NCBI RefSeq assembly: GCF_048593235.1
Contig: NC_133617.1
Coordinates: 497,282,958-497,346,957 of the forward strand
Source: Sminthopsis crassicaudata
Lineage: Eukaryota
Length of the DNA stretch: 64,000 nucleotides
Direction: 5' to 3'
This document shows, piece by piece, positions 19,918 through 54,435 of the stretch (within the stretch, counting starts at the first letter, position 1; every line of letters begins with the position of its first letter). Under the pieces are notes generated by a model that saw nothing but the letters and a program-made list of their open reading frames with translations, searched no databases and had not been told where the DNA came from. The position numbers and the translations under genes are program-made.

Positions 19918-20121
19918 CCTCATCTCCTATACCTTTCCCTCCTACTGGTACCTCCTTTTTGTCCTGTGTGGGGACTGGCTCACCTTCATCCACCAGCACC
20001 CAGTTTGATGTGGGCTCTGGCACAGAAAGCCCAGCGGTCACGTTATTGCCGCCTTTCCTAAGTGACCAGTCACAGCATGTTAACGTCCATGGGACCTTTC
20101 ACCTCATCTGTCAGGCAACTG
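19918..20121 (+). CDS. SEMA4D: SEMA4D alternative-isoform exon A (204 nt, phase 1-1): S/T/P-rich linker and Ig strands A/B
   Basis: Long pyrimidine tract + CACAG; (A)SSPIPFPPTGTSFLSCVGTGSPSSTSTQFDVGSGTESPAVTLLPPFLSDQSQHVNVHGTFHLICQAT(G) matches recalled human isoform 2 (ASSPKPLPPPG...LLPPFLSDQAQHVHALGNFYLFCQATG); G|GTGAGT donor. Confidence 0.92.
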
Positions 20122-23100
20122 GTGAGTAGGAGGAGCCTCCCTATGCCAACAGTGCCGTTGTCTATCTGTCTGTGTCTATATGTGCTGGTACTGCATCATG
20201 GTTTGGAGCTTGAAATGCTGATATCAAGCAAACTACTTTATTGATCTCCATTTACTTGGATTCTTTCTCAGGTATGATTGATTTCTATTGCCTTTCATGT
20301 CTAGATTCCTCAGATAAAAACCACTCTGCTTTTAATATTTTTTTTAATGTCATGTGATTATAGCAGTTAGCTTAAAACTACTTTTTCCTATTGCCTTCTA
20401 CCCTGTCAGCTGATACAGAGATGGTATTTACCTAGCTTTGAAATTTAATTTAAAAAAAGAATTCATCTTAAAACCTAATGAAGGAAAAGTGTTCAAGTCA
20501 TTTAGCTTCTGCATCCCACATGTTCCTTATCTGTTAAAATGGAGATAAAATAGCACTCACCTCCTAGAATTCGTTGTGTGGATTAAATGAGATTAGATTT
20601 GTAAAGTGCTTGGTAAATCTTAAAGTGCTATGTATATATTAGCTGTCTTTATTAGGTCAGAATCCAGGAAGGCTACATTAATCATCCATTCACTGACTAT
20701 TCCAGAGGGACCCCTAAAGAGAAAACAGTGCATGCTCTCACTAGAAGGTTTTGAATTGCTTCATAGAACTTCTAGACAAAATAGATTGAATTGGAATCAT
20801 TTAGGACACTGCTTAACAAATATACAATAGCCCTAGAGATTTTCACCAACTTGAGTATAGGTTCCTTCAAATAGCTGAAGGTTGAGGGTATATAGATTTC
20901 TTCCTTGAAAGCTAGCAGTACTGAGTACAATATATTGTGGAAATTGCTTAATGGAATTTCCTCATCTTTCTGATATCAAGAGGTAGATAGAATGTTCACC
21001 ATCTTCCACATAATCATCAAAGTACTTAGCATAGTAGGCACTTAATAAATGTTTAATGAATATTCTTAAAACTCATGTCTTGCCATGTGACCACCATTCC
21101 CACCAACTCAAAAACTAATAATTTCCCGTTTCCTCTAGGACAAAATAAAAATTTTTCAGCTTGGCATTAGAAAACAAAACCTTTATATCTAGCTCTCACC
21201 TTCCTTACCCACACATCATATTCCATCTCCTACTTCCATGCCTTTGCATAAGTCATCCTTCATATTGGAATGCACGCCCTTCTCAACTTCTCTTAAATCC
21301 ACCCTAGTTTTCTTCAAAACACCACTCAATTAAATATTTTACTCATAGCATTTTCCATTTTTCCCAATTTGTTAGTGTTTATCCACCTGAAATTACTTTG
21401 TATTTACATCCTTATATTAGACCAACTTAAAAGGAATGAAGCAGATGGGACCCCAAGAATTTTGGCAAAGTCTTTGTATAGCATGTGGACACTAAGAAAT
21501 GGGACTGTTACTATCTTGGCAAAAGATAAAGAAGTATGGAAAGCTCTTTGAAGAGAAAAAAAAAGGTTCTCTTATGATCTATCATATGCTTTTACAAAGC
21601 TCATACAAGAAAGCTGAGATTTATTGCTTCTTCCCATGAACAGTGCCAATGTGTAAAGCACATGGGATGAGTTCATAGAATGACCACAAACAGTGTCATG
21701 TAGTGAGTGGAAAAAAGTTCTGGCTAGCTTTGGAATGAAATGTAGGTTTGAATCTTAGCCTTTTTGTTTTAAAATTTTCTTATTTGTATATAAGAAGGTT
21801 AGACTGGAGCTGATATATCTAAGATCCTTTACAGTTTTGAATCCTATCACATACAAATTCATTTTGAATATATTATCCATTTTGTGAGCAACTATAAACA
21901 TATATTACAGAGTATCCTAACAGTTTAACTTCTATTACTTTTATAACTACTAAACAGCTATGATTGTATGTATTTACATGTGTGTATAACATTATATTTG
22001 TATATATGTGTGTATTGCATGTGTGTATATATATATATGCTGTTATATGTAACATATTAGTATCATAGGACTTTTACATAGCAATCAACAAGCCTAATCA
22101 CAGAAAGCTCCCTAAGATCATAGATTTAAAGCTGAAAGGGACCTTAGATGCCATTGATTCTAAAGCCCCATATTTTGCAGATGAGGAAACAGACACAGTG
22201 AAGTTAAATAATTTATCTAGGTTCACACAGCTAAGTGCCTAAGGTAGAATTTGAATCTAGGCTCCTGAATTTTAAATCCAATACTCTGTCCACTGTGCAT
22301 ACTTAAATTGAATGCTGGTACAGAGATACTGTCAATACTCATTCGTCTTATTCCTCCAGATTTAATCAAATGACTGTAATGGTTTAAGACTTTTAGAAGT
22401 ACCAAATGAACTCATCCTTAGCCATTGTGCCTTTGACTTCTTCAATAATCTTTCTGAACCAATTCTACTGATTAATTATAGCCTTGAAAACAGGTTTTGA
22501 AAATCATTCCATTAAGATCTTGTTGGTCCATGAGATTTACATTGACCTTGGCAGGCTTTTTAGATTATGTTCCAGCAATGTCTTCTCTATTTCTTAAGCA
22601 TCCCTTTGTGGAAAATACAGTTTTTCTTCCATAACCTAAGACACATTTCTATGAAAATCTAAATTAAATAGTACTAAAATAAATACAGAACCAAATTATG
22701 CCTACTCTGATATACAAAGGCCCACTTGGGTATTCTTTTTAGTCATAAACTCACAGAGCAATGCAGATATGGAGACATTATAGAATAAATGGCAAAAGCC
22801 CTAAATTTACAAGCTCAACTCCTTTTTTTTTTTTTTCCACTCTGGATGCAAAGTGTCTATGCAAGGCAACTGTTTCTAACCTAGATAAAGGGTCAACCTT
22901 AGTTTTAGTTGGAGTCATATTGGGAATAGGGATGGGCTTGGAGAAAGACTAGAGGGTAACTGAAAACAAAACTGAGAAGATGATTTCAGAAAAGTTAAGG
23001 ATCCTTGTGCCATTCATGGAAAAAATTAAAGTCTGTTTTGAAATGTTCGATAATAATGGATAGACATAGTTTAAAAAAAAAAAAAAAAGGAACACTACTA

Positions 23101-23374
23101 AAGACAACAGTATTTAAAGATATTTTGGGAAGGCAAGGAGCAAAAAGAAGTCTCCTAAGTCCATGGTTCTGAAAATTTACCATCAGAACTGAACTGTTGA
23201 CATGTTGCCAACAAAATAGAATTAAGGATATCTAGAGCCCAGCTTTAGACTCAGAGTCTGAGTTTAAAGCCAAGATTAGGAGAACCAATCAGAGTCAGAT
23301 CACAATAGGGTAAACAAATCAAAAAATCTTTTTCCTTCTCAATTTTGTCCTAGCTACTTTAAAAAATGTTATTT

Positions 23375-23700
23375 GGTTTTATATTATTTTGATTAACATT
23401 TTTTCTCCCTCCCCTCTCCCTAAGATAACAATCATTCCACCATGACTCTTTTGGAATTGTCTTAGATCATTGTATTACTGAAAAGAGCAGTCTATCAAAG
23501 TTGATCATCTGTGTAATATTACTGTTACTGTGTACAATGTTCTCCTGCTGCTCACTTTACCCAGTATCAATTCTTTCCAGTTTTTCTTTCCAGGTTTTTT
23601 CTGAAATCAGCCTGCTATTTTATTTCTTATAGAACAATAATATTCTATTACATTCATATATCACAATTTGTTCAGCAATTCCCCAGTTGATAGCACTTTA
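23375..23700 (-). mobile_element. L1 3' end fragment
   Basis: atcattgtattactga...aagttgatcatc...tacaatgttctcctg...cacaatttgttcagcaattcccc, the marsupial L1 3' end in reverse. Confidence 0.8.
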
Positions 23701-52677: not shown

Positions 52678-53366
52678 TATTACCATGTGCCAGGATGGAG
52701 AGACATTTTGATGGCTACAAAACAAATCATAAACACTTGTCTCAGGGCCTTTATTTGTCCATTAGTTTACTTATACTGTTTTCTATAACTAAAGTGTTTA
52801 ATGTTCTTAAAATGTTATGTACTGAATCCCCATGAGCATCAATACAAAGAAATAATGTAGTTAAAATTTTATGATAGATTTTTAGGGGAGCTAATAAAAT
52901 ATATTAAACAAAGTAAAGCTTCTAAGCTTCTTTAAATTGTCTGAACTCTAGTTCACATTAAATCTGTGTTCCCAAACTCATACTCTAGATTTCAATCACA
53001 AACATTAAAGACAGTTCAAGTAAAAAGAAATCTCAGCACGAGCAAGCCCATCCTAATAATCATCCAATATTTCTTGGATTTTTTTTTTTCATGCTTAGAA
53101 AGAATAAATTAACCACCATCTTGCACAAAAGTAAAAGTTGTAAAAAAGATGTGAAGACACATTGACAGGAAGGAAGAGAGTGTACTGGCATCAACCTTAA
53201 GATACCCCAGAATTTAATTCAATACCTAACTACCTATCGCTACCCTTTGATGTTTTTGAAGACATCCTTTCCTAAATTGAGGTTGGCAGCTTAACCAATA
53301 TATTACACAGCCATACCTTGGATCATAGATTTCTTTTCATCTTGTGGAACTGTTTGTATTTTTCAG

Positions 53367-53464
53367 AGGCCACTCATCAAGAAAGCTGGACTAGAGAGCT
53401 CAATAATTGGAAGACTGTGGTTAATGAGCATGACCAAATGATGCAGAATTGGAAAAAAGCATGG
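53367..53464 (+). CDS. SEMA4D: SEMA4D alternative-isoform exon C (98 nt, phase 1-0)
   Basis: TTTTTCAG acceptor; (E)ATHQESWTRELNNWKTVVNEHDQMMQNWKKAW matches recalled human EVTHQERWTRELSAWRAVAGEHDRMMQSWRKAW; TGG|GTAGGA donor. Confidence 0.9.
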
Positions 53465-54384
53465 GTAGGAGGATCTTTGGATCATTTGTACAGTATCACT
53501 TTGAAGCCTATAGGACAGCAAGAACCTAACACAGTTCTCTGTTTTTCCCCCCATATTCTCAGCTATCATTTAGTGACATCAAAGCAACAGTTTCTTTGTT
53601 CTGATATGCAAAGTCTTTAGTAGAACCCCCATTTATCCAGGATGAGAAATGTCCCAGGAGTTTAGAATGACTATACACTCATATTTCTAAAGAGATTATG
53701 GAAATTCTAATTAGGTAGCTAAAAGAACAATACCTTTGGGGTTGGGACAGGCAATTCAACATTCTTTATACATGTCGACAACTCTTCTTTAAGGGCATGT
53801 GTTTATTTTGTGATGTTAAGTTCCACAAAGTGACGTTTCCTCACATGTTAAATTAAGAGAGTTAGTCTAATTAACCTCAAAATGTCCCTTTTGGAGCTAA
53901 GACTTCAAAAATCCCATGATTCAAAGCTGGTAGCTGGAAAAACAAATGGAATGCAATTTTCAAACCCTATCCATGCACAAATACCTTGTCCCCTACTCCA
54001 CTTAAAGCCACATCAAAGCTGGCAAAAAAAAAAAAAATAATAATAATTTCAACTGGCAAACATAAAACAATACTTTCAGGTCTGGAGGGAGTTCATCTTC
54101 AAAAGTAATAATAATGAGAAAGGAAGTATCCTACCTTTTCCAGAGGTCCATATTTCTGGCATAACCAACAATGACTTTCATAAAGAGTAGATGCCATTAA
54201 TGTGATTCCTATTAGCAAAAACTAATAAAAATCTTTTTCTTTGTATTAATTTCTATTTTTATGTTCTGAGAAACAACCAGATAGATACTAAACAGCCCTA
54301 AATCTTATTAAAATATCAATGTCTTTACAAGAGAGCGGCTTGAGTACAGATTCAAAAGGAAAATTAAGCCTGATTTTCTTTCAG

Positions 54385-54435
54385 GAAAGCTGTAATGAGG
54401 AGACCTATTTAAACAAGAGGCTGGAGAAAAACTGA
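54385..54435 (+). CDS. SEMA4D: SEMA4D alternative-isoform terminal exon D, coding part
   Basis: TTTTCTTTCAG acceptor, phase 0; ESCNEETYLNKRLEKN* against recalled human ESCSKDTL*; TGA at 54433-54435. Confidence 0.85.
   Translation, partial: ESCNEETYLNKRLEKN

What the first reader, a model, noticed from the sequence alone, without database searches (positions are those of the whole stretch)
19918..54435. Complete conservation of the secreted, transmembrane-less SEMA4D isoform with a swapped Ig domain
Seen: four downstream exons with canonical splice sites and compatible phases (1-1-1-0) splice in frame from the donor at 15839. They give sema-PSI, an S/T/P linker, a different Ig domain (C..W..YxC) and an amphipathic, Trp-rich helical tail (WTRELNNWKTVVNEHDQMMQNWKKAW). 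There is no hydrophobic segment. Known: human SEMA4D isoform 2 (former C9orf164) has this C-terminus as I recall it, while soluble SEMA4D is usually attributed to proteolytic shedding. Inference: an intact frame across the marsupial-eutherian split, spread over 35 kb of repeat-laden intron, implies purifying selection on a genetically encoded soluble SEMA4D with its own oligomerisation or partner-binding tail.
Basis: partly seen in the sequence, partly recalled or inferred. Interest (0 to 1): 0.7.

Follow-up and report, generated by a model that had tools for sequence, protein, structure and literature searches.

The report
Annotated secreted SEMA4D splice isoform
The four exons are real and encode the already-annotated form of semaphorin-4D that lacks a membrane anchor; this form is conserved and under selection from ray-finned fish to mammals, yet has hardly been studied.

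Summary
Observation confirmed. Exons 19918-20121, 50211-50420, 53367-53464 and 54385-54435 all have AG/GT boundaries and phases 1-1-1-0, and they join in frame to the donor at 15839.

A public 742-aa protein (P0129, name masked as the window's own product) contains all four exon translations exactly, after Sema and PSI.

More than 160 full-length relatives carry the same tail. They are named "semaphorin-4D isoform X2/2", and in mouse "isoform 3/4 precursor". They come from sturgeon, coelacanth, amphibians, sauropsids and eutherians, and eels carry the same exon module directly downstream of a Sema/PSI gene. None has a transmembrane segment.

A 3.4-kb bat transcript contig carries the joined ORF without introns.

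dN/dS among eutherians is 0.17-0.32, similar to the canonical last exon (0.16-0.25).

The tail consists of:
- a disordered S/T/P linker;
- a divergent Ig domain, confidently modelled;
- a roughly 45-residue helix with an invariant 7-residue series W-W-H-W-C.

I infer from this a disulfide-locked coiled-coil dimer.

The canonical last exon also holds a conserved internal donor (17284|GT). It would give a longer secreted form that keeps both Ig domains.

Verdict: real, selected and mechanistically plausible, but already known at the annotation level. Function is unstudied.

The parts
15797..15839 (+). Last constitutive exon before the branch point (end of the PSI region, ...NGDASSCT). Its donor at 15839|GTAAGT is phase 1.
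   Evidence: The PSI Pfam hit is on the preceding exon, 15558-15695.
16955..17889 (+). Canonical terminal coding exon: canonical Ig, stalk, TM (FLMFLFLFFFVLFLCLFSY) and cytoplasmic tail ending ...KYADSDADGD*. The short secreted isoform skips it.
   Evidence: Acceptor AG at 16953-54, phase 1.
17281..17290 (+). Internal 5' splice site inside the canonical last exon: GAAG|GTAAAG, exon end 17284, phase 1. Joined to exon A it reads ...AAQTE-A-SSPIPF, giving a long secreted isoform with both Ig domains.
   Evidence: The same junction is present in the annotated proteins P0138 and P0132 (names masked) and in P0054, P0067, P0083 and many birds.
18647..19663 (+). Cluster of poly(A) hexamers (ATTAAA 18647 and 19658; AATAAA 19133, 19280, 19446, 19599, 19606) between the canonical stop and exon A. 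These are candidate ends of the membrane-form mRNA.
   Evidence: hexamer matches only; usage not shown.
19846..19917 (+). Conserved intronic block and long polypyrimidine tract upstream of the exon A acceptor. It includes TTTGGCATGTGA (19846-57, with GCATG at 19850-54) and CCTCAGTGCC (19878-87).
   Evidence: The 110 intronic nt are 75% identical to snake and 71% to elephant.
19918..20121 (+). Alternative exon A: S/T/P linker (SSPIPFPPTGTSFLSCVG...) and the first Ig strands, up to ...FHLICQAT-G.
50211..50420 (+). Alternative exon B: core of the alternative Ig domain (VIWEKNG...SWVKD...EYCCS...).
53367..53464 (+). Alternative exon C: amphipathic helix carrying the invariant series W-W-H-W at 7-residue spacing.
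53465..53620 (+). Read-through of the weak exon C donor (GTAGGA) to an in-frame stop. It is annotated as the 776-aa variant P0135 (...KKAW-VGGSLDHLYS...).
54385..54435 (+). Alternative terminal coding exon D: ESCNEETYLNKRLEKN plus TGA. It carries the invariant Glu-x-Cys. It runs 8 codons longer than in most other vertebrates.
54808..54813 (+). First AATAAA after the alternative stop codon. Candidate poly(A) signal of the secreted-form mRNA.
   Evidence: hexamer match only.

Best explanation
These are the alternative 3'-terminal exons of SEMA4D.

RNA level (inferred). The pre-mRNA has three possible fates:
1. Splice 15839 to 16955 and polyadenylate about 1-2 kb after the stop at 17889. This gives the membrane form.
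2. Skip that exon and splice 15839 to 19918, then 20121 to 50211, 50420 to 53367 and 53464 to 54385. This gives the short secreted form of 742 aa.
3. Enter the canonical exon but leave it at the internal donor 17284, before the TM, and splice to 19918. This gives a long secreted form with both Ig domains.

The choice would be a competition between cleavage/polyadenylation and splicing to the distal acceptor.

Protein level:
- Shown from sequence and model: a signal peptide plus Sema-PSI, a disordered S/T/P linker of about 40 residues, a compact divergent Ig domain, and one long amphipathic helix. There is no membrane anchor.
- Inferred: the helix forms a parallel coiled coil. Its a-type positions are W, W, H, W and then an invariant Cys. 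That Cys would disulfide-lock the Sema dimer, giving a constitutively soluble, covalently dimeric plexin-B/CD72 ligand that needs no protease shedding.
For: - Exon anatomy and phases.
- Exact match to the annotated protein P0129.
- More than 160 full-length Sema-PSI proteins with this tail, named semaphorin-4D isoform 2/X2, from sturgeon and coelacanth to mammals; eels carry the same exon module directly downstream of a Sema/PSI gene.
- The junction codon (G|CC = Ala) and the ASSPIPFPP motif are conserved down to Xenopus.
- Synteny: the module lies directly downstream of a Sema/PSI/Ig_SEMA gene, on the same strand, in elephant, pangolin, desman, snake and eel. Splice sites and phases are the same.
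- An intronless 735-aa ORF sits on a 3,385-nt transcript contig from a phyllostomid bat.
- Omega is 0.17-0.32 among eutherians, against 0.16-0.25 for the canonical last exon.
- AF2 model: linker pLDDT below 50, Ig domain above 90, helix 141-189.
- The 7-residue series W149/W156/H163/W170/C177 is invariant or nearly so, with a hydrophobic d/e stripe.
- No TM in any of 165 tails.
Against: - There are no RNA data for this species. P0129 is a computed gene model.
- Relative abundance of the isoforms is unknown.
- The coiled-coil and disulfide idea rests on sequence periodicity and a monomer model only. A conserved His in a core position is unusual, and the helix could instead pack on a partner protein.
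- The Ig subtype is unresolved. Sequence favours I-set while the model favours C1-like.
- PMC9148012 states that both human isoforms are membrane bound. This conflicts with the orthologues examined here. I did not examine the human sequence.
Confidence: 0.85

Rival explanations
1. The four exons are an independent small gene (a stand-alone 'Ig-like domain-containing protein', as some genome annotations have it). They would not be part of SEMA4D.
For: Stand-alone models of 80-375 aa exist in elephant (LOC135232381), snake (LOC131189758), tree shrew, pangolin, desman, lemming, lynx and eels.
Against: - The N-termini of those models are unrelated to one another. They are intron read-through or arbitrary upstream sequence.
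- Exon A always begins in phase 1 behind a conserved acceptor. It has no conserved start codon or signal peptide.
- More than 160 models and a bat transcript contig join it directly to Sema-PSI.
Confidence: 0.04
2. In this marsupial the exons are conserved relics or low-level splicing noise with no functional product. The annotated model would then be projected from other species.
For: There is no transcript evidence for this species in the tools. The exon C donor is weak, and read-through or alternative endings are annotated (P0135, P0136-P0139). The A-B intron has grown to 30 kb.
Against: - All frames and splice sites are intact.
- The tail is 91-100% identical per segment among four marsupial-like proteins, close to Sema-PSI at 96-100%.
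- Window-versus-eutherian omega is about 0.15-0.20, although dS is saturated.
- The intron sequence upstream of exon A is conserved with snake.
Confidence: 0.07
3. The main secreted product here is the long form (Sema-PSI, canonical Ig, part of the stalk, then alternative Ig and helix) made through the internal donor at 17284. The 'Ig-swapped' short form would be secondary.
For: The donor GAAG|GTAAAG is good, and it is conserved with snake. Long forms of about 840-895 aa are annotated in marsupial-like species (P0138 with 31 member sequences, P0132), birds, squamates, frogs, axolotl, coelacanth and sturgeon.
Against: The short form is annotated for the window's own species (P0129). Short forms outnumber long ones 131 to 23 among the proteins fetched. 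The two forms are not mutually exclusive.
Confidence: 0.3

Closest known systems
SEMA4D isoform 2 (human UniProt Q92854-2 as cited in PMC9148012; mouse RefSeq 'semaphorin-4D isoform 3/4 precursor'; 'isoform X2' models in many vertebrates)
   Same: Same gene, same splice architecture and an orthologous tail. The window's own product P0129 belongs to this set.
   Different: Only lineage details differ. Exon D is 8 codons longer, there is an extra Cys (EYCC), the N-K-T glycosylation motif is changed to N-K-A, and the A-B intron is 30 kb against 2-12 kb elsewhere. I did not examine the human sequence itself.
Proteolytically shed soluble SEMA4D (sSEMA4D/sCD100)
   Same: Both are soluble ectodomains that contain the receptor-binding Sema domain.
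   Different: The shed form derives from the membrane isoform and keeps the canonical Ig and stalk. This form is genetically encoded, has a different Ig domain and a helical Cys-bearing tail, and needs no protease. PMC9148012 attributes soluble Sema4D to shedding.
Class 3 (secreted) semaphorins
   Same: Overall plan: Sema, PSI, Ig and a short C-terminal tail with a Cys. Secreted and dimeric (this comparison is from general knowledge).
   Different: This is not a class 3 gene. The tail is not a basic domain, and I saw no RXXR motif when reading the window's tail by eye (no motif scan was run). The Ig domain shows no detectable similarity to the canonical semaphorin Ig. Pfam's Ig_SEMA-3_4_7A family is listed only on products that carry the canonical Ig.
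Immunoglobulin mu heavy chain secreted/membrane switch (splice versus poly(A) competition at a composite terminal exon)
   Same: One gene yields a membrane or a secreted protein through competition between a proximal poly(A) site and splicing to distal exons. That includes an internal donor inside the proximal terminal exon (17284 here).
   Different: The polarity is reversed. Here the proximal exon encodes the membrane anchor and the distal exons encode the secreted tail. Regulation has not been studied.

Membership tests
SEMA4D alternative secreted isoform (isoform 2 / X2) | Sema and PSI domains encoded upstream in the same transcription unit and on the same strand | tested here: met
   Pfam Sema at 6670-6900 and PSI at 15558-15695. 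On P0129, Sema covers 294-481 and PSI 504-554.
SEMA4D alternative secreted isoform (isoform 2 / X2) | In-frame junction from the post-PSI donor to exon A, with the conserved split Ala codon and the ASSPIPFPP motif | tested here: met
SEMA4D alternative secreted isoform (isoform 2 / X2) | Tail orthologous to that of proteins annotated as semaphorin-4D isoform 2/X2 | tested here: met
   239 hits, 37 hits and 153 hits. The alignment A1 has 15 invariant columns.
SEMA4D alternative secreted isoform (isoform 2 / X2) | No transmembrane segment, and an N-terminal signal peptide present | tested here: met
   Kyte-Doolittle scan: tail maximum 0.76, and a hydrophobic N-terminal segment in P0129 at residues 7-28. 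Among 165 relatives the maximum is 1.4. No dedicated signal-peptide predictor was available.
SEMA4D alternative secreted isoform (isoform 2 / X2) | The spliced mRNA actually exists | tested here: inconclusive
   Shown for a phyllostomid bat: L007 is a 3,385-nt contig with an uninterrupted 735-aa ORF. For the window's species there is only a gene model, and no RNA-seq tool was available.
Immunoglobulin superfamily domain | Beta-sandwich with the Cys...Trp...Tyr-x-Cys core | tested here: met
   C68, W80, Y119 and C121 are invariant. The AF2 sandwich has pLDDT above 90. Profile against PDB: titin Ig 5e-17 and LRIG1 Ig 9e-14. Pfam scores for the window's own sequence are below the curated cut-offs (Ig_3 22 bits against 30; I-set 19 against 23.7).
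C1-set versus I-set Ig subtype | Best match at both sequence and structure level to one subtype | tested here: inconclusive
   Foldseek's top hits are beta-2-microglobulin and MHC-II/Ig constant domains (C1), with E about 4e-6 and TM 0.6-0.7. Pfam gives I-set in 47 of 49 orthologues against C1-set in 13 of 49. The PDB profile search puts I-set proteins first.
Parallel coiled-coil dimerisation tail with disulfide lock | Heptad a/d hydrophobic periodicity over at least 4 heptads; self-association; interchain disulfide | tested here: inconclusive
   The periodicity is met: W149, W156, H163, W170 and C177 at 7-residue spacing, with L153, V160, M167 and W174. AF2 gives a single long helix. Self-association and the disulfide cannot be tested with these tools.
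Class 3 semaphorin | Basic C-terminal domain with furin sites, and the canonical semaphorin Ig | tested here: not met
   On reading the tail sequence I saw no basic domain and no RXXR motif. There is no similarity to the canonical semaphorin Ig.

The most novel reading that the evidence does not exclude
The alternative C-terminus is an ancient module, present in ray-finned and lobe-finned bony vertebrates. It consists of an Ig domain and a Trp/His-zipper helix, and it would make a protease-independent, disulfide-locked soluble SEMA4D dimer.

Its Ig domain or helix would carry its own binding partner. Its production would be controlled by a conserved intronic element upstream of exon A.

If so, part of the 'soluble SEMA4D' measured in blood and tissues would be this gene product and not the shed ectodomain.
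Probability: 0.3. Interest if true: 0.6.

Novelty: already known. Interest (0 to 1): 0.35.

Why it matters
Soluble SEMA4D is a biomarker and an antibody target, and its origin is routinely attributed to metalloprotease shedding. PMC9148012 even states that both human splice forms are membrane bound.

The evidence here shows that the second splice form lacks any anchor in the more than 160 orthologues examined. It is conserved at least across ray-finned fishes, coelacanth and tetrapods, and it evolves under constraint comparable to the canonical C-terminus. It also has a tail built for self-association or partner binding.

That makes isoform-specific assays and knock-outs worthwhile. It is not a new gene product, though. 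It is annotated in human, in mouse and in this very genome.

Tried and rejected
- **Pfam on single exons.** Exons A, B and C matched no family, so the per-exon scan left the protein open. That is why I used the large representative search with exon B. The word search cannot see kin of a different length from a 69-aa exon.
- **Recent duplication of the canonical Ig.** Rejected. BLASTP of exon B against the canonical last exon finds nothing. The canonical Ig is not split by an intron, while the alternative Ig is.
- **'C1-set domain' as a firm label.** Dropped after the sequence-level tests favoured I-set.
- **DNA of close marsupial-like relatives for a within-marsupial dN/dS.** P0127, P0138 and P0132 are not on record in the look-up of encoding contigs. 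I used protein identities instead.
- **Rfam over the whole window.** No RNA family found.
- **Transposon ORFs in the 30-kb intron.** No long ORFs worth scanning. Only short dispersed repeats turned up, so 'repeat-laden' is only partly verified.
- **Literature.** Six searches found no functional study of this isoform. C9orf164 appears only as a microarray symbol, so its equivalence to these exons remains unverified.
  - I did not build or search a joined exon model. Exons were searched by reference, and whole proteins were taken only from the database (P0129 and others).
  - dN/dS counts were pooled exon by exon without making a joined sequence.
  - No contig that I take for human was fetched.
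  - Unnamed Logan proteins (P0211, P0215, P0216, P0234, P0235, P0252) were not pursued, and the human isoform sequence was not examined.

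
Full report
**1. The observation**

I read every claimed boundary directly and recomputed lengths, phases and translations.

- The donor after the last PSI-region exon is CTG|GTAAGT, with the exon ending at 15839 in phase 1.
- Exon A (19918-20121, 204 nt), exon B (50211-50420, 210 nt), exon C (53367-53464, 98 nt) and exon D (54385-54435, with TGA at 54433-35) each sit between an AG and a GT.
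- The window contains no N.

From the base composition, three stop-free frames of these lengths have a joint chance of about 3e-6. The database evidence below makes chance irrelevant anyway.

**2. Local context**

The canonical SEMA4D terminal exon lies between the donor and exon A, at 16955-17889. Its acceptor AG is at 16953-54, in phase 1. It encodes the canonical Ig domain, the stalk, a strongly hydrophobic TM segment and the cytoplasmic tail ending KYADSDADGD.

Exon A starts 2.0 kb after that stop. A cluster of AATAAA/ATTAAA hexamers lies at 18647-19663. The four exons are therefore distal alternative last exons.

The same spacing of 1.5-2 kb is seen in elephant, pangolin, desman, snake and eel.

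**3. Searches, exon by exon**

Pfam found no family for exons A, B or C taken singly. The word search cannot see relatives of a different length from a 69-aa exon. I therefore spent the one large representative search on exon B.

It returned 49 hits. Thirty-two are clear kin, all short stand-alone models of 80-375 aa. They show the same A-B-C-D order of motifs.

Their sources are lynx, tree shrew, pangolin, elephant, lemming, desman, a snake, Xenopus and two eels. The Xenopus cluster also holds a 729-aa 'semaphorin-4D isoform X2'. In it the tail follows Sema-PSI through the same junction...GDASQCP-A-SSPIPFPP.

I did not build a joined model of the window's exons at any point. From here on I used stored database proteins by reference.

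**4. It is an annotated isoform, including in this genome**

Searching with the tails of the Xenopus, alligator and sturgeon proteins gave 37, 239 and 153 hits. Nearly all are named semaphorin-4D isoform 2 or X2.

- They come from frogs, a caecilian, axolotl, turtles, crocodilians, birds, squamates and many eutherians.
- Mouse has curated 'isoform 3/4 precursor' entries, and non-human primates have 738-aa entries.
- Coelacanth and sturgeon are also represented.

Ten hits have masked names, which the tool uses for products of the window itself or its close kin. P0129 (742 aa) contains the four exon translations exactly, and its residues 176-742 map at 100% onto window exons.

P0135 (776 aa) is the same protein with read-through of the weak exon C donor to the stop at 53620.

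PMC9148012 cites the two human UniProt isoforms. The C9orf164 link could not be checked, because the symbol appears only in microarray tables.

**5. Transcript evidence**

The tools hold no RNA-seq for this species.

One unnamed hit, P0143, is 97% identical to Phyllostomus proteins, so it is from a bat and not human. It is encoded without interruption on a 3,385-nt Logan contig from run SRR13417561. That contig can only be a spliced mRNA.

Other unnamed Logan proteins were not pursued. I fetched no contig that I take for human.

**6. Conservation of gene structure**

I fetched six loci: elephant L001, pangolin L002, tree shrew L003, desman L004, snake L005 and eel L006.

- Every exon that I located has the same AG/GT boundaries and phases. 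Exon A could not be found in tree shrew L003.
- In every locus a short terminal exon begins GA(A/G)-x-TG(T/C), coding E-x-C.
- In five of the six, a Sema/PSI/Ig_SEMA gene lies directly upstream on the same strand.
- Desman has an L7Ae-domain gene downstream on the opposite strand, and eel has a CKS gene there.

The window's A-B intron is 30.1 kb, against 2.3-12.4 kb in the other loci.

**7. Selection**

I computed Nei-Gojobori counts exon by exon and pooled them as counts.

| Comparison | Alternative exons | Canonical last exon |
|---|---|---|
| Eutherian pairs, omega | 0.17-0.32 | 0.155-0.25 |
| Eutherian pairs, dS | 0.46-0.95 | 0.46-0.98 |
| Eutherian pairs, dN | 0.127-0.169 | 0.115-0.170 |
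| Window vs eutherians, omega | about 0.15-0.20 (dS saturated, rough) | not computable (dS saturated) |

The bootstrap upper bounds for the eutherian pairs on the alternative exons are 0.50 or less.

Protein identities tell the same story:

- Window against eutherians: Sema-PSI 76-79%, alternative Ig 61-65%, helix 56-68%.
- Among marsupial-like proteins, the tail is 91-100% identical per segment.
- The first part of the linker (ASSPIPFPPTGTSFLSCVG) is identical between the window and crocodilians.

The tail is under purifying selection of roughly the same order as the canonical C-terminus.

**8. The protein**

An alignment of 49 tails (A1) has these invariant residues, numbered on P0129:553-742: P49, L51, Q54, L66, C68, P73, W80, W108, Y119, C121, W156, H163, W170, E175 and C177.

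AlphaFold2 with this alignment gives three regions:

- a disordered linker at 1-39, with pLDDT below 50;
- an Ig sandwich at 45-139, with pLDDT mostly above 90;
- one helix at 141-189.

*Ig subtype.* Foldseek puts beta-2-microglobulin and MHC/Ig constant domains first. The sequence profile puts titin, LRIG1 and RPTP I-set domains first. Pfam matches I-set in 47 of 49 orthologues against C1-set in 13 of 49. I leave the subtype open. The window's own sequence stays below Pfam's curated cut-offs. It shows no similarity to the canonical SEMA4D Ig.

*Helix.* W149, W156, H163, W170 and C177 are spaced by exactly seven residues. They are flanked by a conserved hydrophobic stripe: L153, A/V159, V160, M166, M167 and W174. 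This is what a coiled coil looks like. The invariant Cys continues the a-position series.

*Membrane anchor.* None of the 165 full-length relatives has a TM-grade hydrophobic stretch in the last 190 residues.

**9. Mechanism**

*Shown:* the exon structure, the in-frame product, the lack of an anchor, the conservation and the constraint.

*Inferred:*

- Isoform choice is a competition between polyadenylation after the canonical exon and splicing to the strong, conserved exon A acceptor.
- The product is secreted through the shared signal peptide.
- The helix self-associates, and Cys177 (P0129 residue 729) locks a dimer. This would supply the covalent dimerisation that semaphorin signalling to plexins depends on. 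That dependence is general knowledge and was not tested here.

**10. A second secreted form**

Frog, sturgeon, coelacanth, axolotl, bird, squamate, some eutherian and marsupial-like proteins of about 840-895 aa keep the canonical Ig and part of the stalk. They then continue ...QTE-A-SSPIPF into the same tail.

The window has the matching internal donor, GAAG|GTAAAG, with the exon ending at 17284 in phase 1. Snake has GAAG|GTAACA and pangolin a weaker GTGGTA. Elephant and desman have lost it. So 'swapped Ig' describes only one of two anchor-less products.

**11. Comparison with what is known, and verdict**

This is SEMA4D isoform 2/X2. The membership features tested here are met. The one exception is transcript evidence in this species, which the tools cannot supply.

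It works like a class 3 semaphorin in overall plan, and like the immunoglobulin mu secreted/membrane switch in RNA logic. It belongs to neither.

It is already known as an annotation. I found no functional study in the library. One paper describes both human isoforms as membrane bound, which the orthologues contradict.

Interest is therefore moderate. The extra points here are leads for experiments and not discoveries of a new kind:

- depth of conservation down to ray-finned fish;
- the heptad Trp/His/Cys tail;
- the internal donor;
- the conserved intronic block.

Whether the window is marsupial could not be checked, because the names are masked. The 757-Mb scaffold carrying P0129 and a SINE-like repeat that I recall from marsupial genomes (from memory) are consistent with it.

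Noticed in passing
window 17281-17290: An internal donor, GAAG|GTAAAG, sits inside the canonical last exon just before the stalk and TM. Spliced to exon A it gives a long secreted isoform with both Ig domains. It is conserved in snake, weak in pangolin and lost in elephant and desman.
   Followed up: yes
window 19846-19887: An intronic block upstream of the exon A acceptor is conserved with snake (75% over 110 nt) and elephant (71%). It contains GCATG (an Rbfox-type motif, as I recall) at 19850-54. It also contains CCTCAGTGCC, whose core CCTCAG is invariant in all six species including eel (pangolin diverges after it). This is a possible splicing regulator. GCATG itself is no more frequent in the window than chance predicts (39 found, about 35 expected).
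   Followed up: partly
window 53465-53620: The weak exon C donor (GTAGGA) is read through in an annotated 776-aa variant (P0135). Related marsupial-like species have other endings after ...KKAW (P0136-P0139).
   Followed up: partly
window 58441-58534 and 60478-60576, minus strand: These segments resemble the last exons of the L7Ae-domain gene (SECISBP2-like) that lies downstream of the module in desman. A convergent neighbour gene therefore ends about 4 kb from the alternative SEMA4D stop.
   Followed up: partly
window 17413-17433: The canonical stalk reads STVSEPK. Elephant, pangolin and desman have a Cys at this position (SMPCQPK, STSCEPK, STSCAPQ), and snake also lacks it. If that Cys is the dimer disulfide of the membrane form (my recollection for human), this marsupial's membrane form lacks it. 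The alternative tail keeps its invariant Cys.
   Followed up: no
window 54409-54435: Exon D is 8 codons longer than in most vertebrates (ESCNEETY-LNKRLEKN against ESCNKDxx). A more divergent marsupial-like protein (P0132) stops after ...EDNY, so the stop appears to have shifted in this lineage.
   Followed up: partly
window 5058-5202, 25459-25603, 49200-49344 (direct); 16038-16115, 26616-26697 (inverted); 1979-2072 and 34252-34345: Dispersed SINE-like repeat families. The second family carries ...TTTGGGGTTTTCTTGGCAAAGATACTG..., which I recall from marsupial SINEs (from memory, not tested).
   Followed up: no
window 51696-51804 and 52489-52597: An inverted repeat with 109-nt arms, 83% complementary and 684 nt apart, lies inside the B-C intron. 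It could form a long hairpin in the pre-mRNA or be two opposed repeat copies.
   Followed up: no
window 15860-15885: A 26-nt T run lies 20 nt downstream of the branch-point donor at 15839.
   Followed up: no
window 50345-50350 (EYCC) and alignment A1 columns for C20 and C90: There are extra cysteines beside the Ig pair. C90 is present in tetrapods, C20 (LSCVG) in amniotes, and a lineage-specific second Cys sits next to C121. How they pair is unknown.
   Followed up: no
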